Source: Octopus bimaculoides (taxonomy: Eukaryota). From it: a stretch of 32,085 nt of DNA. Location: assembly GCF_001194135.2 (NCBI RefSeq), contig NC_068989.1:66518031-66550115 (forward strand), in the 5' to 3' direction. A model generated the notes under the pieces. The model was not told the origin of the DNA. It made no database searches and saw nothing but the letters and a program-made list of their open reading frames with translations. The position numbers and the translations under genes are program-made. Positions 3,969 through 32,085 of this stretch are shown in pieces; the first letter of the stretch is position 1; each line of letters begins with the position of its first letter.

Positions 3969-5081
3969 TTATTTTTTTCTACGACGATTACTACGACAAA
4001 TAAAAGTGTCTTTAAAACTCTTTCTGAAATTATCAGAGACCAGCGCATAGAGGAGAGGATTTAAACCGCTGTTTGCATAATAAAGTAAATAACATATTGG
4101 AGAAAATAAACTTCCAAGAGATCGCGTGTCTGCCCACATGTATAAACAAGATCTGATATGGTAAGGAAGAGCTAATACAGCGAATGAACCAATTATCATT
4201 ACAAGAAGAATAATGACTTTTCTTCGGGCTTGGATCGCTTTCTGTGTAGTAACTCGTGGATAATTTTTTTGATGATGCTGTTCAGGGCATATCTGACTTG
4301 AAATATTGTTGTGCCTTAAAGTTTCTTTAACAAGAGTTACTCTTTGAAGGCTATTTCTGTTACTTGAGTGTCCTTTCATCGATGAACCAGCGCTATTTAG
4401 ACTGTCTATTGAGTAAATCTCTGTGTTACTCCCACAATCAGTTTCACCTTCGCATTCCGACATGCATTCACTTTCTATATAGGGTTCTCTGTTTGATAAA
4501 GTTACTTTGCATTTATCTCTATCCAGAGAAATATCTTTATAACCAGAACACACAAATTCTTTATTTTGATCTTCATACTTTCTGTCGTTCATTTCTCTGC
4601 AGGAATGAGAATAATAGTTTTGATTCTCTTTTTGGTTTGAAGAAACACTTTTTCCGCTAACACATTTTCTGTAAGTCTGAGAACTAGTATTCAAAACAAA
4701 GTTTTTAGAACTACTGCTTTGCCAAAGCACAGCTGCAATTTTGACGTACATGAATGTAAGCACTGATAATGGAATAGTGTACCAAATGACAAGGTTAGCT
4801 AGGACATACGCATTGGTATTTATACTATCAGAACGTATGTAGCAATAAGTGTTGTTGCCAATAACAAACGTATCATAGTCTACAAGTTGAGGAGAGTTGT
4901 AGATAATCAAGAATAACCAGATAAATCCTTGTAAGATCTTCAGCCGTCTAAATGTGAACATCTGCTTGGCCTTCAAAGGATACAGTACAGCTATGTATCG
5001 TTCCACTGAAATTACCGTAAGAAGCAGTACAGGCACGGTCAAACTCATGTAATGAACAAAGTAGTACAATTTACACATCAC
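3969..5081 (-). CDS. TrissinR: Trissin receptor-like GPCR, coding exon 3 (TM3-TM7 and C-tail)
   Basis: Acceptor TTTTTTTTGCAG|GTG ATG TGT. 370 codons plus TAA with C3.25, ERY, TM4 W...P, TM5 IP...Y, TM6 FAVLALPYH, TM7 NSGLNPLLY and helix 8 SDNFRKSF. Spliced CDS is 1440 nt = 479 aa. ARRKVI..L, LPYH and NSG.NPLLYA..S.NFRK resemble insect trissin receptors as I recall them. Confidence 0.93.
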   Translation of the reverse strand: MMCKLYYFVHYMSLTVPVLLLTVISVERYIAVLYPLKAKQMFTFRRLKILQGFIWLFLIIYNSPQLVDYDTFVIGNNTYCYIRSDSINTNAYVLANLVIWYTIPLSVLTFMYVKIAAVLWQSSSSKNFVLNTSSQTYRKCVSGKSVSSNQKENQNYYSHSCREMNDRKYEDQNKEFVCSGYKDISLDRDKCKVTLSNREPYIESECMSECEGETDCGSNTEIYSIDSLNSAGSSMKGHSSNRNSLQRVTLVKETLRHNNISSQICPEQHHQKNYPRVTTQKAIQARRKVIILLVMIIGSFAVLALPYHIRSCLYMWADTRSLGSLFSPICYLLYYANSGLNPLLYALVSDNFRKSFKDTFICRSNRRRKK

Positions 5082-5217
5082 CTGCAAAAAAAAAGCCAAC
5101 TAAAATTAGCATACATATATACACATATGCGTATACGCACACATGCACGCACGCTTACATACATATACAGACACACATACATACATATATAAATAAATAA
5201 ATATATATGTATATAAT

Positions 5218-25941: not shown

Positions 25942-26971
25942 CTAATCTAAAATACACTCTCCTTGATTTTCTACAATTCTCTTCCATCTATCTTATAGAC
26001 TTGCAAAGCCCCTCTTCCAAACTTTACATGTCCGTGACGAAAAATACTCCTCCAGTACTGTTCTGATCTCGTCTACAGAATTCATATTTTTTCCGTCCAA
26101 ATGATTTTGAAAACTGCGGAATGAATTATAATCAGATGGGGCAACGTCCGGCGAAAATGGTGGCTAAAGCATCGTTTCCTATTCAAACTGCTCCAGCCTT
26201 TGAAATGTCATCCGCGCTGTATGTGGCCGAGCATTATCCTGATGGAAGAATATCTTTCGTCTTGAAACCAAGGATGGTCGTTTTTCTTCTAGCGCTGTCT
26301 TAAGCCGCTCAAACCTCTCACAGTAGATCTCCTTTGTTATCGTTTGGTTTCGGCTTAAAATTTCAAAGTGGACTAAACCTCCCATATCCTACCAAACAGA
26401 TAACAACACCTTACGTGGGTGAAGACCTTCTTTAGCTTGGGGCGCTGGTGTTTCTCCCTTCCCTATCCATTGTTTTCGGCACTTAACATTTTTGTAGAGA
26501 ACCCATTTCTCGTCACCTATTACTATTCGGTCGAAAAAATGTTTCATTCGTGAGACGTGACCGCAAAGAAGAGCATACATTCACTCTCTGCGCGCGATTA
26601 GACTCGGAAAGTTTGTGTGGAAACCATTGACCCAATTTGCTGACTTTTCCGATGACACGCAAGTGATAATGAGTGGTTGAATGACCAAATCCAAACTTCT
26701 CTGCTAGTTCCTCAACAGTTACGATAGGATTTTGTTCCACCAGGGTTTACAAGACGTCCTCATCGAGCTCTACAAATATTCCAGGATGAGGCTCGTCTTC
26801 CAGGCTGTAGTTTCTGGCTCGGAATTTCTGGAACCACCGTTGACACTGACTTACGCTTATTGTCCGATCCCCATATACTACATTAGTATTCCTCACACTT
26901 TCCGTTACGTTGTTGCCTTTATTGAACTCATAAAGCAAAATATGCCGAATATGTTCCTTTGTCACTTCCAT
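25942..26971 (-). pseudogene. Mariner transposase pseudogene (DD34D)
   Basis: MEVTKEHIRHILLYEF (HTH), QWFPHKL (WVPHEL-like), GDEKW, HQDNARPH, PPFSPDVAPSDY. Exactly 34 residues lie between the 2nd and 3rd D. Ends ...IVENQGECILD*. Contains frameshifts and in-frame TAG stops. Confidence 0.92.
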
Positions 26972-27434
26972 TATAGCTTTCAAAATATGACTGTTAAAAT
27001 CGAACTGCATTCTTCAAATCTTTCACTAAGAATAAGGTCAAGGTAAAATTACTACCTTCTTTTATAGTAAGTTGATGCAGGTAGTTTATCCCGTCCTCCT
27101 CCGACTTTTAGTTCATACAGCTGAAAAAGCTGCATTATTTATGGGATGACCCATTATTATGCATATAATAAAATTACGACTGAATATAATAAGTGATAAT
27201 TATCAACTTGTATATAAGGAGAAAGTGAATATAAAATCACCTCCTACATTCTCTTGACAGTTTTACATAAAATCTTTAGTAGGAGCAGCGAAGACTAAAA
27301 AGTATGTTTCACTACGACATCATGTTAATGAAAGATATCAAGGGGAAGTGAATATTCTGGTGAAGAATCTCAGGATCAGTTCTGTACCGTACAAAATATG
27401 CCTTTAAAAATCTGGTTCTAACTGAGCTAAAAAT

Positions 27435-27480: not shown

Positions 27481-30400
27481 TAGGTACTAAGGACGATGTT
27501 TTCGACTCTTCTCTCCACACCAAAACAAAAAGTGTAACTGTATGTCTCTATATAAATATGCTTATTAGTGATATTCTGAATATAAATATGATTATTAGTG
27601 ATATTCTGTCTTTGAAATCCAAATGAATGCTGCGTAAAATATGCACGTAAAAAATCTGACATGAAACATTCAGGAAAATATGCTATATCAGAAACGACTG
27701 GTCATTTATGACCAAACTGAAACCGCTTCTTTTATCCCAAACAACTCATAAAATTCCAAAATGCAAACCTATGTTTTATAAATAATCCTATTCTAAATAT
27801 TTGTATTCTCTAGTATAGAATCGGAAAGTGTTGTGTGATAAATAACTTCATAAGGGACTATGACTACTAACCGGTTTCGTTTGTCACTTAAAGTTAGCAT
27901 TGTCTCCATATTCTATTAATGCCTATGGTAGTTATTTATCCTGATCAATACCCTTTCATGTTTTGTTTTCTTGTCAAACTATCGTTTTCATGTCTAGTTA
28001 TCATGTTTAACACTCCCTTTCATGTTTTGTAATATATCAGTAGCCTGCCTGCACTATATCTGCTGTATTGTTTCTTAAAGGATCCAAACACCATTGTAAT
28101 CTAGTAAGTAATCAAAGTGTCTCAATTTTTCTATTGTGCGTGTTGTTTACTAACCTTATTGAACATGGTTCATCTTTGTAACAAAGAAACACGTGAACAC
28201 TTTCTGTATCATACTACTCAATAGAGAAGACATTTTGAAAATGGCTTTAATGGAGGTGAAATTATATTTAACGAAACACTAAGTTTTTCCTATTCATATA
28301 GAATACAAAAGGTTTTCATAGAAATATTTCATTCTTAGGTATCATTACTTCGTTTCAGTTTCTTGTTCTTTTCTCTAGTTTTTGTGGCTATGTTCTCTGG
28401 TTATTCTTTTGTATGAGCATTATTATATACCTTCATCAGTCTATAATGGTTTAGATGAAATTTACACTGAATGAATGAACAGATAAATAAATAAATTAAT
28501 AATAACTCATATTGAAACGTTTTGAGAAGATACAATAAAATTGCTGAAATTACAGGAAATTTATAAATTTGTATTCAGATTCATTGATAAATAAAGCCCG
28601 AGGGTATATATTCTTTATACAAACATTCTACATGACAGATTCACCCATTAGTTAACTGCATTTGACAGATGTATTAAATGAGCCATCGTCAAAGATGTAT
28701 TAAAAGAGCCAACGTAAAAGTTGTTGGATTCAGAACCAGATTCCGTGTATAGATTACAAGGTTGAACAAAAACAGTTAATATTTCTTTAACGTCCTCAGG
28801 GATTTTGAGAGCATCAATAGACATTTTCTTAGTATTTTAAGTATTCTCTGCATCACCATACTTACTTCTATATACTCCATCTATTGATTTACTCATACAC
28901 AATTTATTACAACAGAAACAGATGAGTATGGGTCGTATTGTGTCATGGTATTATTGAAAACATTACTATATACTCTGAGCTCAAGTGTCGCCAAATCCAC
29001 GAGATTTGATTCAAAATGTCTACTTGAACATCCAACAATACAAGAAGAATAAAATAAAGTAGTAATCAAGCATTGGAGATCAGTTACATTAATAATCACC
29101 CTTGTTCAAAACGTGTACTGTATTCAAATAACTATTTATATACATCACTCTTTTGGGTAAAATGTATTAAGAATAAAAATATGTTTATTCTAATACGAGT
29201 AACATCTTGCAGAATGAGCATACTGCTATGCTGAACAGTGATAAATCAGTTTAGTACTAGTTGTTACTGCGCTCTTTCTTTTTTAGAGCAAAATCTGTAT
29301 TTGCGTCATTCTTAATAACTTCACTCAATTTTATTAACTTTTAACAACCAATACATATAACTCATGAATTTCTGTGTGATTTGTCACCTACCCGCAGCAC
29401 AACAAGCGAGAGTTGTGTTTTAGCCAGTAGGGTAAAGTTAAAACTCGATCTTTATAATATTTGACAATATTTTCCTTCAATGCAAAACTCTATATACAAT
29501 ATAATTTTTCTTTACATCGATGATATACTTTCGAAAATTATCCACCGACTAATCAAATTGTGTGTGCCGTGTGAAAGTGCGTATATAAGATTAGGTAAGT
29601 TGAAAACTTTGTATTAAATTATATCATTCTTGAAATTCAACGAAAAATACCCGCTATATTTGCTTTGTAAGATCCACCCTAAATGCATTATGCCTTCTTA
29701 AAGATATAATCTCAGCAATTCTTCAAATATACTATATGTGTAAAACAATTGTACTCCGACATTGCCGCATTCTAATGACCGAAACTACTATACATATATA
29801 TAATTGCATAATATTTTTATTTGTTTTGTTAAATGTTTTAATTCGGTCTGTTTTCCTCGCATACTGTTTTTCTCTGTTATATTGGTGCGCTACGGTGGAT
29901 TACTTAAGACTTGGCTCTTATTTCTAGCAGGTAGATGCTCATTAAGCATCATTACGATATTTCATAGCTCCTTAAAGCTATCATAACTGCGTTCCACCAA
30001 TGCTACTACTGGTGATATCATCAAATTTTGAATTTATCCACAGATGATATGAACAGTAGTGACATCGAACTTCAAATCTCCGTGTTTGAATATTTCATTT
30101 AAATATATATATATATATATATATATANNNNNNNNNNNNNNNNNNNNNNNNNNNNNNNNNNNNNNNNNNNNNNNNNNNNNNNNNNNNNNNNNNNNNNNNN
30201 NNNNNNNNNNNNNNNNNNNNNNNNNNNNNNNNNNNNNNNNNNNNNNNNNNNNNNNNNNNNNNNNNNNNNNNNNNNNNNNNNNNNNNNNNNNNNNNNNNNN
30301 NNNNNNNNNNNNNNNNNNNNNNNNNNNNNNNNNNNNNNNNNNNNNNNNNNNNNNNNNNNNNNNNNNNNNNNNNNNNNNNNNNNNNNNNNNNNNNNNNNNN

Positions 30401-31049
30401 NNNNNNNNNNNNNNNNNNNNNNNNNNNNNNNNNNNNNNNNNNNNNNNNNNNNNNNNNNNNNNNNNNNNNNNNNNNNNNNNNNNNNNNNNNNNNNNNNNNN
30501 NNNNNNNNNNNNNNNNNNNNNNNNNNNNNNNNNNNNNNNNNNNNNNNNNNNNNNNNNNNNNNNNNNNNNNNNNNNNNNNNNNNNNNNNNNNNNNNNNNNN
30601 NNNNNNNNNNNNNNNNNNNNNNNNNNNNNNNNNNNNNNNNNNNNNNNNNNNNNNNNNNNNNNNNNNNNNNNNNNNNNNNNNNNNNNNNNNNNNNNNNNNN
30701 NNNNNNNNNNNNNNNNNNNNNNNNNNNNNNNNNNNNNNNNNNNNNNNNNNNNNNNNNNNNNNNNNNNNNNNNNNNNNNNNNNNNNNNNNNNNNNNNNNNN
30801 NNNNNNNNNNNNNNNNNNNNNNNNNNNNNNNNNNNNNNNNNNNNNNNNNNNNNNNNNNNNNNNNNNNNNNNNNNNNNNNNNNNNNNNNNNNNNNNNNNNN
30901 NNNNNNNNNNNNNNNNNNNNNNNNNGGTGAATACAGTGTCTTCCGTTTCCACCAACGGCAGCGGACGTACTGTTACAAAACTTCGTGCTCTGTAAAAACA
31001 GAATAGATGCCCTATGGAGGAAAGAGGGGATTAATCGTGGGTACGCAGC

Positions 31050-31727
31050 CCACTTTTTAGCATTGCAGAATTGGCAATTGAACCGCATTTCCCCTATATT
31101 TATGTCAGCGCGGATGGAGTAATTAAAGTTGGGCTCATACTTGAAAGCCCGTAGGTGCCAGTAAGGGCTGCTGGGACTCGTCACACCGCACGCAGCTTCT
31201 CACCGTTGACTGTTCCGCTGCAACGTAGAACGTTGCCCGTGTTGGTCGTGGGAAGGTCTCGCAGCAGTAGCAGAAGCCACGTTTTCAATGGTAATGGTCC
31301 GCCCATCTGCATCTTCAGAAGCCATGGAAGCGGTATTAGCGGCAGTGTTCCTAGCAAAGCGAGTTGTCCGTTGTTCCAAACGTTCGGAAGACCTGGAAGC
31401 GGCAGTTGCTGCAGCGTTTGTAGCCAGTCAAGTGGCTCTTTGTTCCTAGCCCTCTGAAGACCTGGAAGCAGCATTAGCAGCAGCGTTTCTAGCTAGGCGA
31501 GTCACCCTTTGTTCCGGGCCCTCTGTAGCCCTGAAAGCAGCATCGTATGAAGCCATTTTGGCTAGGCGTACGGTGCGCTGTTGGAAACTTTCAGCAGCTC
31601 AGCATTCTGCTGAACGTAAGGCGCTCTGTGAAAGTCTAACAGGAGTTTGGTCGGAGGACTCGTTTGCTCTAATCGCCTTTAGCACCAGTGCTGATGCGGT
31701 ATAAGAACTTCTCTTTTTCGGTGGCAT
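31050..31727 (-). pseudogene. Decayed Helitron-like RepHel N-terminal fragment with 23-aa STPR-like repeats
   Basis: One frame from ATG 31727 (MPPKKR...) through E.xQR..RLA repeats with a 69-bp period to RAFKYEPNFNYS...IGEMRFNCQFCNAKKW. The last part resembles the AF.Y.P...IG.M...C..C.A.KW zinc-finger region of animal Helitron RepHel proteins. Four in-frame stops, no frameshift. Confidence 0.7.
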
Positions 31728-32085
31728 TCCATGTCTCAAAGAAAGGGTGAAATTACTTGTACAGAGAAATTGTTTTGGAAAGTGTGTATAAAATTGAAGG
31801 GGGGGGTGATAAGAAACGGCAAATGAATAAATAAACTGACAGGTATTTGTATGTATGTGTATATTTGTATGTATGTGTGTATTTGTATGTATGTTATCAA
31901 TCAGTTTCATTTCTGTATTTCTTGTCCATAGAGAAAGAGCCGGACTCTAACATAGATTCAAGGCTCCTTCATTGGAACTTTTATCAACATCAACTAGGTA
32001 TTTGTGCATATGTGTGTGTGTGCAGTATTTGGTGTTAGTGTATGCGCAGATTTGTATGTTTGTTTTATGGATGCGTTTTTATGTC

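What the first reader, a model, noticed from the sequence alone, without database searches (positions are those of the whole stretch)
31248..31661. Five 23-aa STPR-like repeats at the N-terminus of a Helitron-like protein
In one minus-strand frame with an exact 69-bp period: ESSDQTPVRLSQSALRSAEC*AA / ESFQQRTVRLAKMASYDAAFRAT / EGPEQRVTRLARNAAANAASRSS / EG*EQRAT*LATNAAATAASRSS / ERLEQRTTRFARNTAANTASMAS, plus a degenerate sixth. The period and the E-x-x-E-Q-R-x-x-R-L pattern, and especially RLAKMASY, match the STPR DNA-binding domain of silkworm FMBP-1 (23-aa repeats such as ETSEERAARLAKMSAYAAQRLAN, from memory). The repeats follow an NLS-like MPPKKR start and precede a CxxC-A-x-KW Helitron-type zinc-finger region. 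The ORF track misses this because stops split it. It points to a Helitron family with an STPR-type DNA-binding module, and to transposons as a possible source of host STPR factors (inference).
Basis: partly seen in the sequence, partly recalled or inferred. Interest (0 to 1): 0.7.

Follow-up and report, generated by a model that had tools for sequence, protein, structure and literature searches.

The report
Decayed Helitron fragment encoding STPR repeats
The repeats are real and do encode the STPR DNA-binding motif at the start of a Helitron transposase gene, but this copy is a dead, internally deleted transposon remnant, and the link between STPR repeats and Helitrons was already published in 2024.

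Summary
On the minus strand, 31661-31248 is six in-register 69-bp units (23 aa each) after an MPPKKR start at 31727. The fragment hits Pfam STPRs (E=3.8e-18, 66 bits against a cut-off of 27) and the solved FMBP-1 STPR domain. Shuffled, reversed and other-frame controls score nothing.

The Helitron reading is also right, but only relatives show it. Octopus copies continue in series into Helitron_like_N (Rep) and a PIF1 helicase, and end in a hairpin plus CTAG|T. The IGEM.F.C.FC motif aligns to the N-terminal domain of the bat Helitron transposase Helraiser.

The window copy itself is dead:
- It has four in-frame stops.
- At about 31037-31043, just after CQFCNAKKWA, it jumps to a ~117-bp piece of the Helitron 3' region. 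The Rep and helicase (about 4.5 kb) are deleted.
- It then runs into a 798-N assembly gap, which hides the 3' end.

STPR arrays fused to the N-terminus of Helitron-like transposases are widespread: molluscs, insects, a pseudoscorpion, a lizard, a hagfish, and amphioxus Helentrons. HELIANO (NAR 2024) already lists STPRs among domains carried by Helitrons.

Verdict: a new member of a known kind, of low to moderate interest. Whether host STPR factors derive from transposons remains open.

The parts
31844..31894 (-). 18-bp tandem (about ACATACATACAAATACAC, 2.8 copies) at the upstream limit of similarity to the O. bimaculoides copy. This is the zone of the presumed 5' boundary or flank.
   Evidence: TRF. 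Similarity to L002 stops at window 31859 = L002 7665, where L002 reads A|TC. The terminus is tentative because only two copies are available.
31728..31859 (-). 5' leader upstream of the ATG, shared with the O. bimaculoides Helitron copy.
   Evidence: blastn: window 31859-31318 matches L002 7665-8239 at 77%; the last ~47 bp also match L001 at 85%.
31662..31727 (-). Start codon and basic leader MPPKKRSSYTASALVLKAIRAN (NLS-like; that function is inferred).
   Evidence: An MPPK[KR] leader is conserved in octopus, hagfish, snail and metagenome relatives.
31248..31661 (-). Six in-register 69-bp units encoding 23-aa STPR repeats (R1-R6; R6 degenerate). Three in-frame stops lie inside the array (31601-31599, 31448-31446, 31430-31428).
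31098..31247 (-). Degenerate seventh unit and linker (DQHGQRSTLQRNSQR*...YWHLRAFKYEPNFNYS...), with a fourth stop at 31202-31200.
   Evidence: The segment is conserved in octopus relatives P0001, P0007 and P0008.
31050..31097 (-). IGEMRFNCQFCNAKKW: the first half (CxxC) of the Helitron N-terminal Zn-finger-like motif. The second half (E..PG.CC..GKV) is lost.
   Evidence: The L001 equivalent aligns to Helraiser 7LCC from residue 115. C215, C218, A220, E226, C231, C232, G235 and K236 are (nearly) invariant in alignment A5. Coordinates.
31037..31043 (-). Internal-deletion junction with short microhomology (about ACCCA). The 5' part is joined directly to the 3' region, and about 4.5 kb (Rep plus helicase) is missing.
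   Evidence: Window 31553-31037 matches L001 10160-10685 and L002 8084-8580. Window 31043-30926 matches L001 15169-15287 (78%) and L002 13084-13200 (86%).
30926..31042 (-). Fragment of the Helitron 3' non-coding region. It corresponds to sequence about 270-390 bp upstream of the CTAG terminus in relatives.
30128..30925 (.). Assembly gap of 798 N. The expected 3' hairpin and CTAG terminus would lie about 275 bp into it.
   Evidence: No 3'-end motif is found anywhere in the window.

Best explanation
The feature is the decayed 5' end of a Helitron (rolling-circle DNA transposon) in what is most likely an octopus genome. It preserves the start of the RepHel transposase gene:
- a basic MPPKKR leader;
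- an array of six 23-aa STPR repeats;
- the first Cys pair of the Helitron N-terminal Zn-finger-like domain.

An internal deletion then joins this directly to a piece of the element's 3' non-coding region, so the HUH nuclease and the PIF1-like helicase are gone. Four stop codons confirm that the copy is non-functional.

In intact relatives the same array is translated in frame as the N-terminal head of the transposase. By homology with FMBP-1's STPR domain, each 23-aa unit forms one alpha-helix that lies in the major groove and covers about 4 bp. Recognition is mainly of the shape of AT-rich DNA, through Arg6/Arg9 phosphate contacts.

The most likely role is to tether the transposase to AT-rich double-stranded DNA, at the target site and/or near the element ends. 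The Zn-finger, Rep and helicase core then carries out the single-strand 'peel-and-paste' reaction.

Basis of each step:
- Shown: identity of the repeats, the fusion architecture in relatives, and the deletion and decay of this copy.
- Inferred: nuclear import by the leader, DNA binding by this array, and its role in targeting.
For: STPR identity.

Helitron context:
- O. sinensis locus L001 carries STPRs, then Helitron_like_N (2.9e-59), then PIF1 (1.7e-64) and Pif1_2B in series.
- L002 (O. bimaculoides) and L004/L005 are collinear with it.
- Helraiser aligns to the N-terminal region.

Canonical termini in relatives:
- 3' ...GCCCCGAGCAACGCCGGGCA.TTC.GCTAG|T in four independent insertions (five loci, of which L001 and L005 are orthologous), with the flanks diverging immediately afterwards.
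- 5' A|TCTCTTATTATAAAAGGCAG in three independent copies.

Deletion in the window: blastn and tblastn maps. An independent deletion derivative exists in gap-free O. vulgaris sequence (L003).

In-frame fusion in single predicted proteins from many phyla: P0007, P0034, P0037, P0039, P0042, P0105, P0129, P0254.

Structure: AF2 of P0007 gives six helices of 20-24 residues separated by 3-residue breaks, pLDDT 60-90. This matches the BmSTPR zig-zag described in PMC4856987.

Conserved residues: the window repeats keep Glu1, Arg6, Arg9 and Leu10.
Against: - The window holds no Rep or helicase and no observable 3' terminus (N gap). Its 5' terminus is only tentative. Element membership therefore rests on 72-86% DNA identity to relatives.
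- The C-terminal half of the octopus units is Ala/Ser-rich. It lacks FMBP-1's Met13, Ser14, Tyr16 and Leu21 contacts (Tyr16 is present only in R2), so the binding preference may differ.
- No experiment links any Helitron STPR array to DNA binding or targeting.
- The flank test for AT-rich microsatellite targeting depends on the threshold and has n=6.
- Helraiser, the only biochemically studied Helitron transposase, is not hit by the STPR profile. The array is therefore dispensable for the core reaction.
Confidence: 0.88

Rival explanations
1. The locus is a pseudogene of a host STPR transcription factor (FMBP-1/ZNF821-like) and has nothing to do with a transposon.
For: Host STPR factors exist widely in animals (PMC4856987). 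Several octopus relatives are annotated as ordinary 'uncharacterized protein' genes with only PF21107.
Against: - The ORF continues into the Helitron-specific IGEM.F.C.FC motif, which aligns to Helraiser.
- The sequence then joins a Helitron 3' region.
- Every close relative whose locus I could read is a Helitron or a Helitron deletion derivative.
- No C2H2 or other host-type domain is present.
Confidence: 0.02
2. The STPR segment is a passenger: a captured host gene fragment carried in a separate ORF, as HELIANO implies for most accessory domains. It would not be a working part of the transposase.
For: HELIANO states that 17 of the 20 accessory domains, by implication including STPRs, are encoded in ORFs different from RepHel, and it treats them as capture events. 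Helraiser works without an STPR array.
Against: - The array sits between the ORF's own conserved MPPKKR start and the Zn-finger domain, in the same frame.
- This holds in uninterrupted predicted proteins from snail, flies, wasps, pseudoscorpion, lizard, hagfish and octopus.
- It also holds in amphioxus Helentron-type proteins.
- Position and reading frame are conserved while repeat number varies.

An ancient capture followed by fixation as a domain remains compatible with the best explanation.
Confidence: 0.07
3. The missing Rep and helicase is an assembly artefact (a collapsed or mis-joined region beside the 798-N gap), and the real locus holds a full-length element.
For: A large N gap lies 112 bp from the junction. 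The window has seven N gaps, so the assembly is fragmentary.
Against: - The junction at 31037-31043 lies in uninterrupted sequence and shows microhomology.
- The order 5' part then 3' part is what a deletion gives.
- O. vulgaris L003, which has no Ns, shows an independent deletion with its right breakpoint only 17 bp away.
- The four stops show decay regardless.
Confidence: 0.06

Closest known systems
STPR DNA-binding domain of Bombyx mori FMBP-1 (Pfam PF21107; PDB 5D23/5D2Q/5D2S)
   Same: Strict 23-aa period. E1-x-x-E-Q-R6-x-x-R9-L10 core. Predicted tandem helices with short breaks. Significant reciprocal profile matches.
   Different: - The C-terminal half of each unit is Ala/Ser/Asn-rich and lacks the Met13/Ser14/Tyr16/Leu21 contacts; the basic residue is at position 21 rather than 20.
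- There are six or seven units rather than four.
- The array is at the extreme N-terminus of a transposase, not in the C-terminal half of a small transcription factor.
- Here it is a pseudogene.
Helitrons (HLE1) carrying STPRs, as catalogued by HELIANO (Li et al., NAR 2024, PMC11417382)
   Same: Same association: an STPR domain upstream of RepHel in Helitron-type elements. The octopus relatives have Helitron_like_N plus PIF1 and 5' TC / 3' hairpin-CTAG ends.
   Different: - The paper lists the domain without describing it, and implies it lies in a different ORF from RepHel. In the relatives read here it is an in-frame N-terminal fusion.
- The paper calls STPRs almost exclusive to HLE1. I also find it on DUF6570/OTU/APE-bearing Helentron-type proteins of amphioxus.
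- The window copy is a non-autonomous remnant.
Helraiser, the reconstructed bat Helitron transposase (PDB 7LCC)
   Same: The N-terminal Zn-finger-like region (C..C...CC..GKV, then ..YN..F.FTS.GA..) aligns at E=2.7e-24. Octopus relatives share the downstream Rep and helicase architecture.
   Different: No STPR array is detectable in Helraiser with the STPR profile. The window retains only the first CxxC of the finger.
ZNF821 / CG14440-type host STPR proteins
   Same: They carry the same repeat family (PMC4856987).
   Different: They combine STPR with C2H2 fingers or other host domains. Only 3 of the 112 top STPR carriers that lacked a detectable octopus-like Helitron part had C2H2 fingers. Of the top 150, 38 had such Helitron parts and a further 14 had DUF6570. 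The profile used was built from Helitron-linked arrays, so these counts are biased.

Membership tests
STPR domain (Pfam PF21107) | Tandem repeats of exactly 23 residues | tested here: met
   69-bp period by TRF. Six in-register units. Identity is 62% at period 69 and at most 36% at other offsets.
STPR domain (Pfam PF21107) | Profile score above Pfam's gathering threshold | tested here: met
   66.1 bits against a cut-off of 27, E=3.8e-18. Independent profile 71.6 bits against a shuffle maximum of 4.6.
STPR domain (Pfam PF21107) | Conserved Glu1, Thr/Ser2 and Arg9 in each repeat (PMC4856987) | tested here: inconclusive
   Glu1 is present in R1-R6. Arg9 is present in R1, R2, R3 and R5; it is a stop in R4 and Thr in R6. 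Position 2 is Ser in R1-R2 but Gly, Gly, Arg and Asp in R3-R6.
STPR domain (Pfam PF21107) | One alpha-helix per repeat, running along the major groove of AT-rich DNA | not testable with these tools
   AF2 of the intact relative P0007 predicts six 20-24-residue helices with 3-residue breaks. DNA binding itself needs an experiment.
Helitron (HLE1) transposon | RepHel ORF with an HUH/Y Rep nuclease domain (Helitron_like_N) | tested here: not met
   Absent from the whole window (tblastn), having been deleted. Present in relatives L001, L002, L004 and L005. The window copy therefore qualifies only as a Helitron-derived remnant.
Helitron (HLE1) transposon | PIF1-like helicase domain | tested here: not met
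   Absent from the window. Present in relatives at E=1.7e-64.
Helitron (HLE1) transposon | N-terminal Zn-finger-like motif of the transposase | tested here: inconclusive
   Only the first half (IGEMRFNCQFCNAKKW, 31097-31050) survives. The full motif in relatives aligns to Helraiser.
Helitron (HLE1) transposon | 3' end with a GC-rich hairpin about 10 nt before CTRR, inserted between A and T; 5' end TC | not testable with these tools
   The window's 3' end lies in the N gap. Its 5' end is tentative (about 31860, by comparison with A|TC at L002 7664). In relatives both ends are canonical.
Helitron (HLE1) transposon | DNA homology to both the 5' and 3' regions of bona fide family members | tested here: met
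   31859-31037 and 31042-30927 match the 5' and 3' regions of the O. bimaculoides element at 77-86%.

The most novel reading that the evidence does not exclude
The STPR array may be an old, integral DNA-binding head shared by Helitron-like transposases of both major groups. The groups are Helitron/HLE1 (octopus, snail, insects, lizard, hagfish) and Helentron/HLE2 (amphioxus).

On this reading the array steers insertion towards AT-rich, short-period repeat DNA. The animal STPR transcription factors (the FMBP-1, ZNF821 and CG14440 families) would be domesticated offshoots of it, rather than its source.
Probability: 0.15. Interest if true: 0.6.

Novelty: new member of a known kind. Interest (0 to 1): 0.27.

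Why it matters
For this window it matters little. The locus is one more dead Helitron remnant in a repeat-rich cephalopod-like genome, and it should be masked or annotated as such rather than as a gene.

More broadly, the relatives show that the STPR array is an in-frame N-terminal module of many animal Helitron-like transposases, including Helentron-type ones. This is more specific than the published statement, which lists STPR as a captured domain, implies a separate ORF, and calls it almost exclusive to HLE1.

STPR reads the shape of AT-rich DNA in 4-bp steps, and Helitrons insert at AT sites. This suggests a concrete, testable idea for how some Helitrons choose targets, and a candidate origin for a little-studied family of animal transcription factors.

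Tried and rejected
1. Word-indexed homologue search seeded with FMBP-1's STPR domain found nothing. I therefore could not compare host and transposon STPR neighbourhoods that way.
I re-ran it with a stop-free slice.
3. I tested whether the STPR array binds (ATAC)n/(TTTA)n tracts inside the element's 5' end. The window and L002 copies do have such tracts near the presumed 5' boundary. The well-defined 5' terminus of the O. sinensis/vulgaris subfamily has none, so I dropped this as a general explanation.
4. Targeting of AT-rich microsatellites: 4 of 6 independent 3' flanks are TA/TACA-like against 12.8% background at one threshold, but 2 of 6 against 10.8% (P=0.13) at the next. This is suggestive only. 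The threshold was chosen after seeing the data, n is tiny and the genome is rich in microsatellites.
5. Helraiser having an STPR head: not supported.
6. The 5' terminus of the window copy: the L001-type terminus is absent from the window and from L002. Only a two-copy boundary at about 31859 is available.
7. The HELIANO supplementary table on STPR is not held in the library.
8. A fuzzy-regex search timed out and was replaced by blastn.
9. A fold search was not run. Outside the helical array the AF2 model has low confidence (mean pLDDT 53).
10. Rfam: no hits in the window.

Full report
**1. The observation**

The window looks eukaryotic: AT-rich (about 33% GC), full of microsatellites, and broken by seven N gaps.

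On the minus strand, Tandem Repeats Finder reports a 69-bp array at 31318-31568. A 22-aa leader (MPPKKR...) is followed by six in-register 23-aa units, R1 at 31661-31593 through R6 at 31316-31248, and then a barely recognisable seventh.

There are four in-frame stops, at 31601, 31448, 31430 and 31202. Unit-to-unit DNA identity is 68-80% for R3-R5, 55-58% for R2 and 41-48% for R1 and R6. Off-period offsets give a mean of 25% and a maximum of 36%.

**2. Is it STPR?**

Yes.
- Pfam PF21107 (STPRs) scores 66.1 bits against a gathering cut-off of 27, E=3.8e-18.
- The solved STPR domain of FMBP-1 (5D23) aligns in register at E=6.7e-8.
- A profile built only from Helitron-linked arrays of other animals hits 5D23 at E=2.3e-18 and the window fragment at 71.6 bits.
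- With that profile the reversed sequence scores -16.5, 1000 residue shuffles score -16.6 +/- 3.4 (maximum 4.6), and no other reading frame scores. This is not a composition artefact.

Measured against the published structure (PMC4856987), the window units keep Glu1, Arg6, Arg9 and Leu10. Their C-terminal halves are Ala/Ser/Asn-rich and lack Met13, Ser14, Tyr16 and Leu21, except that R2 (RLAKMASY) keeps Tyr16.

**3. Is it the head of a Helitron protein?**

The window alone cannot show this. tblastn with Rep and helicase queries finds nothing in the 32 kb, and only residues 1-228 of the N-terminal piece match (31727-31038, 50% identity, E=2.7e-44). Relatives settle the question.

- The best protein hits are octopus proteins, plus a hagfish and a metagenome sequence. 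All start MPPKKR and all carry PF21107.
- In the O. sinensis locus L001 the same ORF continues, with two frame breaks, through CQFCNAKKWAGEPPAMCCLNGKVSLPP...IRKYNCAFQMTSFGA.
- It then runs into LPHAHILLW / YICKYVNKG (the HUH and Tyr motifs) and FFLDAPGGTGKTF.
- Pfam gives STPRs (5.8e-10), Helitron_like_N (2.9e-59), PIF1 (1.7e-64) and Pif1_2B (1e-13) in that order.
- The segment from IGEM.F.C.FC onward aligns to residues 115-388 of Helraiser, the bat Helitron transposase (7LCC), at E=2.7e-24.

The ends are canonical.
- 3' end...GCCCCGAGCAACGCCGGGCA.TTC.GCTAG|T is found in five loci, which represent four independent insertions because L001 and L005 are orthologous. The flanks diverge immediately afterwards.
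- 5' end: A|TCTCTTATTATAAAAGGCAG in three independent copies of the O. sinensis/vulgaris subfamily.

**4. What the window copy is**

Window 31859-31037 matches the 5' part of the O. bimaculoides element (L002 7665-8580, 77-81%). Window 31042-30927 matches L002 13084-13200 (86%) and L001 15169-15287 (78%). That sequence lies downstream of the helicase stop and about 270-390 bp before the CTAG end.

The copy therefore lacks about 4.5 kb, comprising the second half of the Zn finger, the Rep and the helicase. The junction at 31037-31043 shows short microhomology. The sequence then enters the 798-N gap, which hides the expected 3' terminus.

O. vulgaris locus L003, in gap-free sequence, is an independent deletion derivative. 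Its left breakpoint is different, but its right breakpoint is only 17 bp from the window's.

The 5' terminus of the window copy is tentative. Similarity to L002 stops at 31859, where L002 reads A|TC, and the window has an 18-bp tandem repeat there.

**5. How the module probably works**

In intact relatives the array is in frame between the ORF's own start and the Zn-finger domain. Examples are P0007 (octopus), P0037 (the snail Physella), P0034 (Musca), P0105 (Cotesia), P0129 (Leptopilina), P0254 (pseudoscorpion), P0039 (Anolis), P0003 (hagfish) and P0042.

Repeat number ranges from about 3 to about 17. Arrays expand by tandem duplication: a 147-bp unit at 2.7 copies and 96% identity in L001, and a 69-bp unit at 3.3 copies and 83% in L002.

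AF2 predicts six 20-24-residue helices with 3-residue breaks for P0007, at pLDDT 60-90. This matches the BmSTPR zig-zag, which runs along the major groove at 4 bp per helix and prefers AT-rich tandem 4-bp units.

My inference is that the array tethers the transposase to AT-rich duplex DNA. Helitrons insert at A|T, so target choice is the most attractive role. I could not establish it. The flank test is suggestive but depends on the threshold, and the end-binding variant fails for one subfamily. Helraiser lacks the array, so the array is an accessory to the core reaction.

**6. What is known**

HELIANO (NAR 2024) lists STPRs among 20 domains stably carried by Helitron-like elements. It calls them almost exclusive to HLE1 and implies they lie in a different ORF from RepHel. 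Helitrons are also an annotated TE order in O. vulgaris.

Two details go beyond the paper.
- The fusion is in frame.
- The array is also found on Helentron-type proteins. Branchiostoma floridae XP_035683454.1 reads STPRs-DUF6570-Helitron_like_N-PIF1-Exo_endo_phos, and an ENA protein reads STPRs-DUF6570-OTU-Helitron_like_N-PIF1.

An exhaustive HMMER search finds 1355 cluster representatives with this repeat at E<=1e-3.
- Of the top 150, 38 have octopus-like Helitron parts.
- Of the remaining 112, 14 have DUF6570 and 3 have C2H2 fingers, and most of the rest are short STPR-only predictions, many with the MPPK[KR] leader.

The profile came from Helitron-linked arrays, so these proportions are biased and do not settle the direction of transfer between host genes and transposons.

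**7. Verdict**

The object is a dead, internally deleted Helitron remnant: a new member of a known kind, of low to moderate interest. The open and more interesting question is the role and origin of the STPR head in Helitron-like transposases. That question lies outside this window and needs experiments.

Noticed in passing
window 3969-5099 (-): A 376-aa ORF with a rhodopsin-family GPCR domain (7tm_1, E=3e-34; ERY and NPxxY motifs). This is probably a genuine host exon or gene.
   Followed up: partly
window ~26000-26990 (-): A mariner/Mos1-like transposase pseudogene (HTH_48 1.3e-20, Transposase_1 9.4e-21) with stops and frameshifts.
   Followed up: partly
window 31037-31043; L003 ~9798: Two independent deletion derivatives (the window copy and O. 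vulgaris L003) have different left breakpoints. Their right breakpoints are only 17 bp apart (L001 15169 and 15186), and both keep about the last 390-410 bp. This may mark the minimal 3' cis region or a recombination hot spot.
   Followed up: no
P0147 (Branchiostoma floridae XP_035683454.1), P0132, P0260: STPR arrays also head Helentron/HLE2-type proteins (STPRs-DUF6570-[OTU]-Helitron_like_N-PIF1-[Exo_endo_phos]). This is at odds with the published statement that STPRs are almost exclusive to HLE1.
   Followed up: partly
P0003 (hagfish Eptatretus burgeri) and P0002 (JGI contig, 3.6 kb): These two near-identical N-terminal sequences are 54% identical to the octopus Helitron N-terminus, including the MPPKKR leader. 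They could reflect horizontal transfer between distant animals, or contamination.
   Followed up: no
L001 10054-10451; L002 8013-8239: STPR arrays are dynamic. There is a 147-bp (two-unit) tandem at 2.7 copies and 96% identity in O. sinensis, and a 69-bp tandem at 3.3 copies and 83% in O. bimaculoides. Repeat number ranges from about 3 to about 17 across taxa.
   Followed up: partly
L001 8857-15561 and L005 6889-13559: The O. sinensis and O. vulgaris copies share both flanks, so this is an orthologous insertion that predates the split of the two species. Both sides of this insertion and of the L004 insertion are TA/TACA/TG microsatellites.
   Followed up: partly
L001 5461-5490 (-), L005 3434-3463 (-) and 38821-38850 (-): 3' ends of a sister Helitron family (AACCCGAGCAACGCCGGGCGATACTGCTAG|T) lie a few kb from the STPR-bearing copies.
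   Followed up: no
window 29832-30121: A repeat about 74% identical to L001 6319-6619, in the same orientation as the Helitron but lying upstream of it in L001. It is an unrelated interspersed repeat just beyond the N gap.
   Followed up: no
L001 8923-9034 and 9214-9325 (also L004, L003, L005): The long 5' leader of the O. sinensis/vulgaris subfamily contains two ~110-bp direct repeats about 290 bp apart (74-76% identity). They are possible subterminal binding sites.
   Followed up: no
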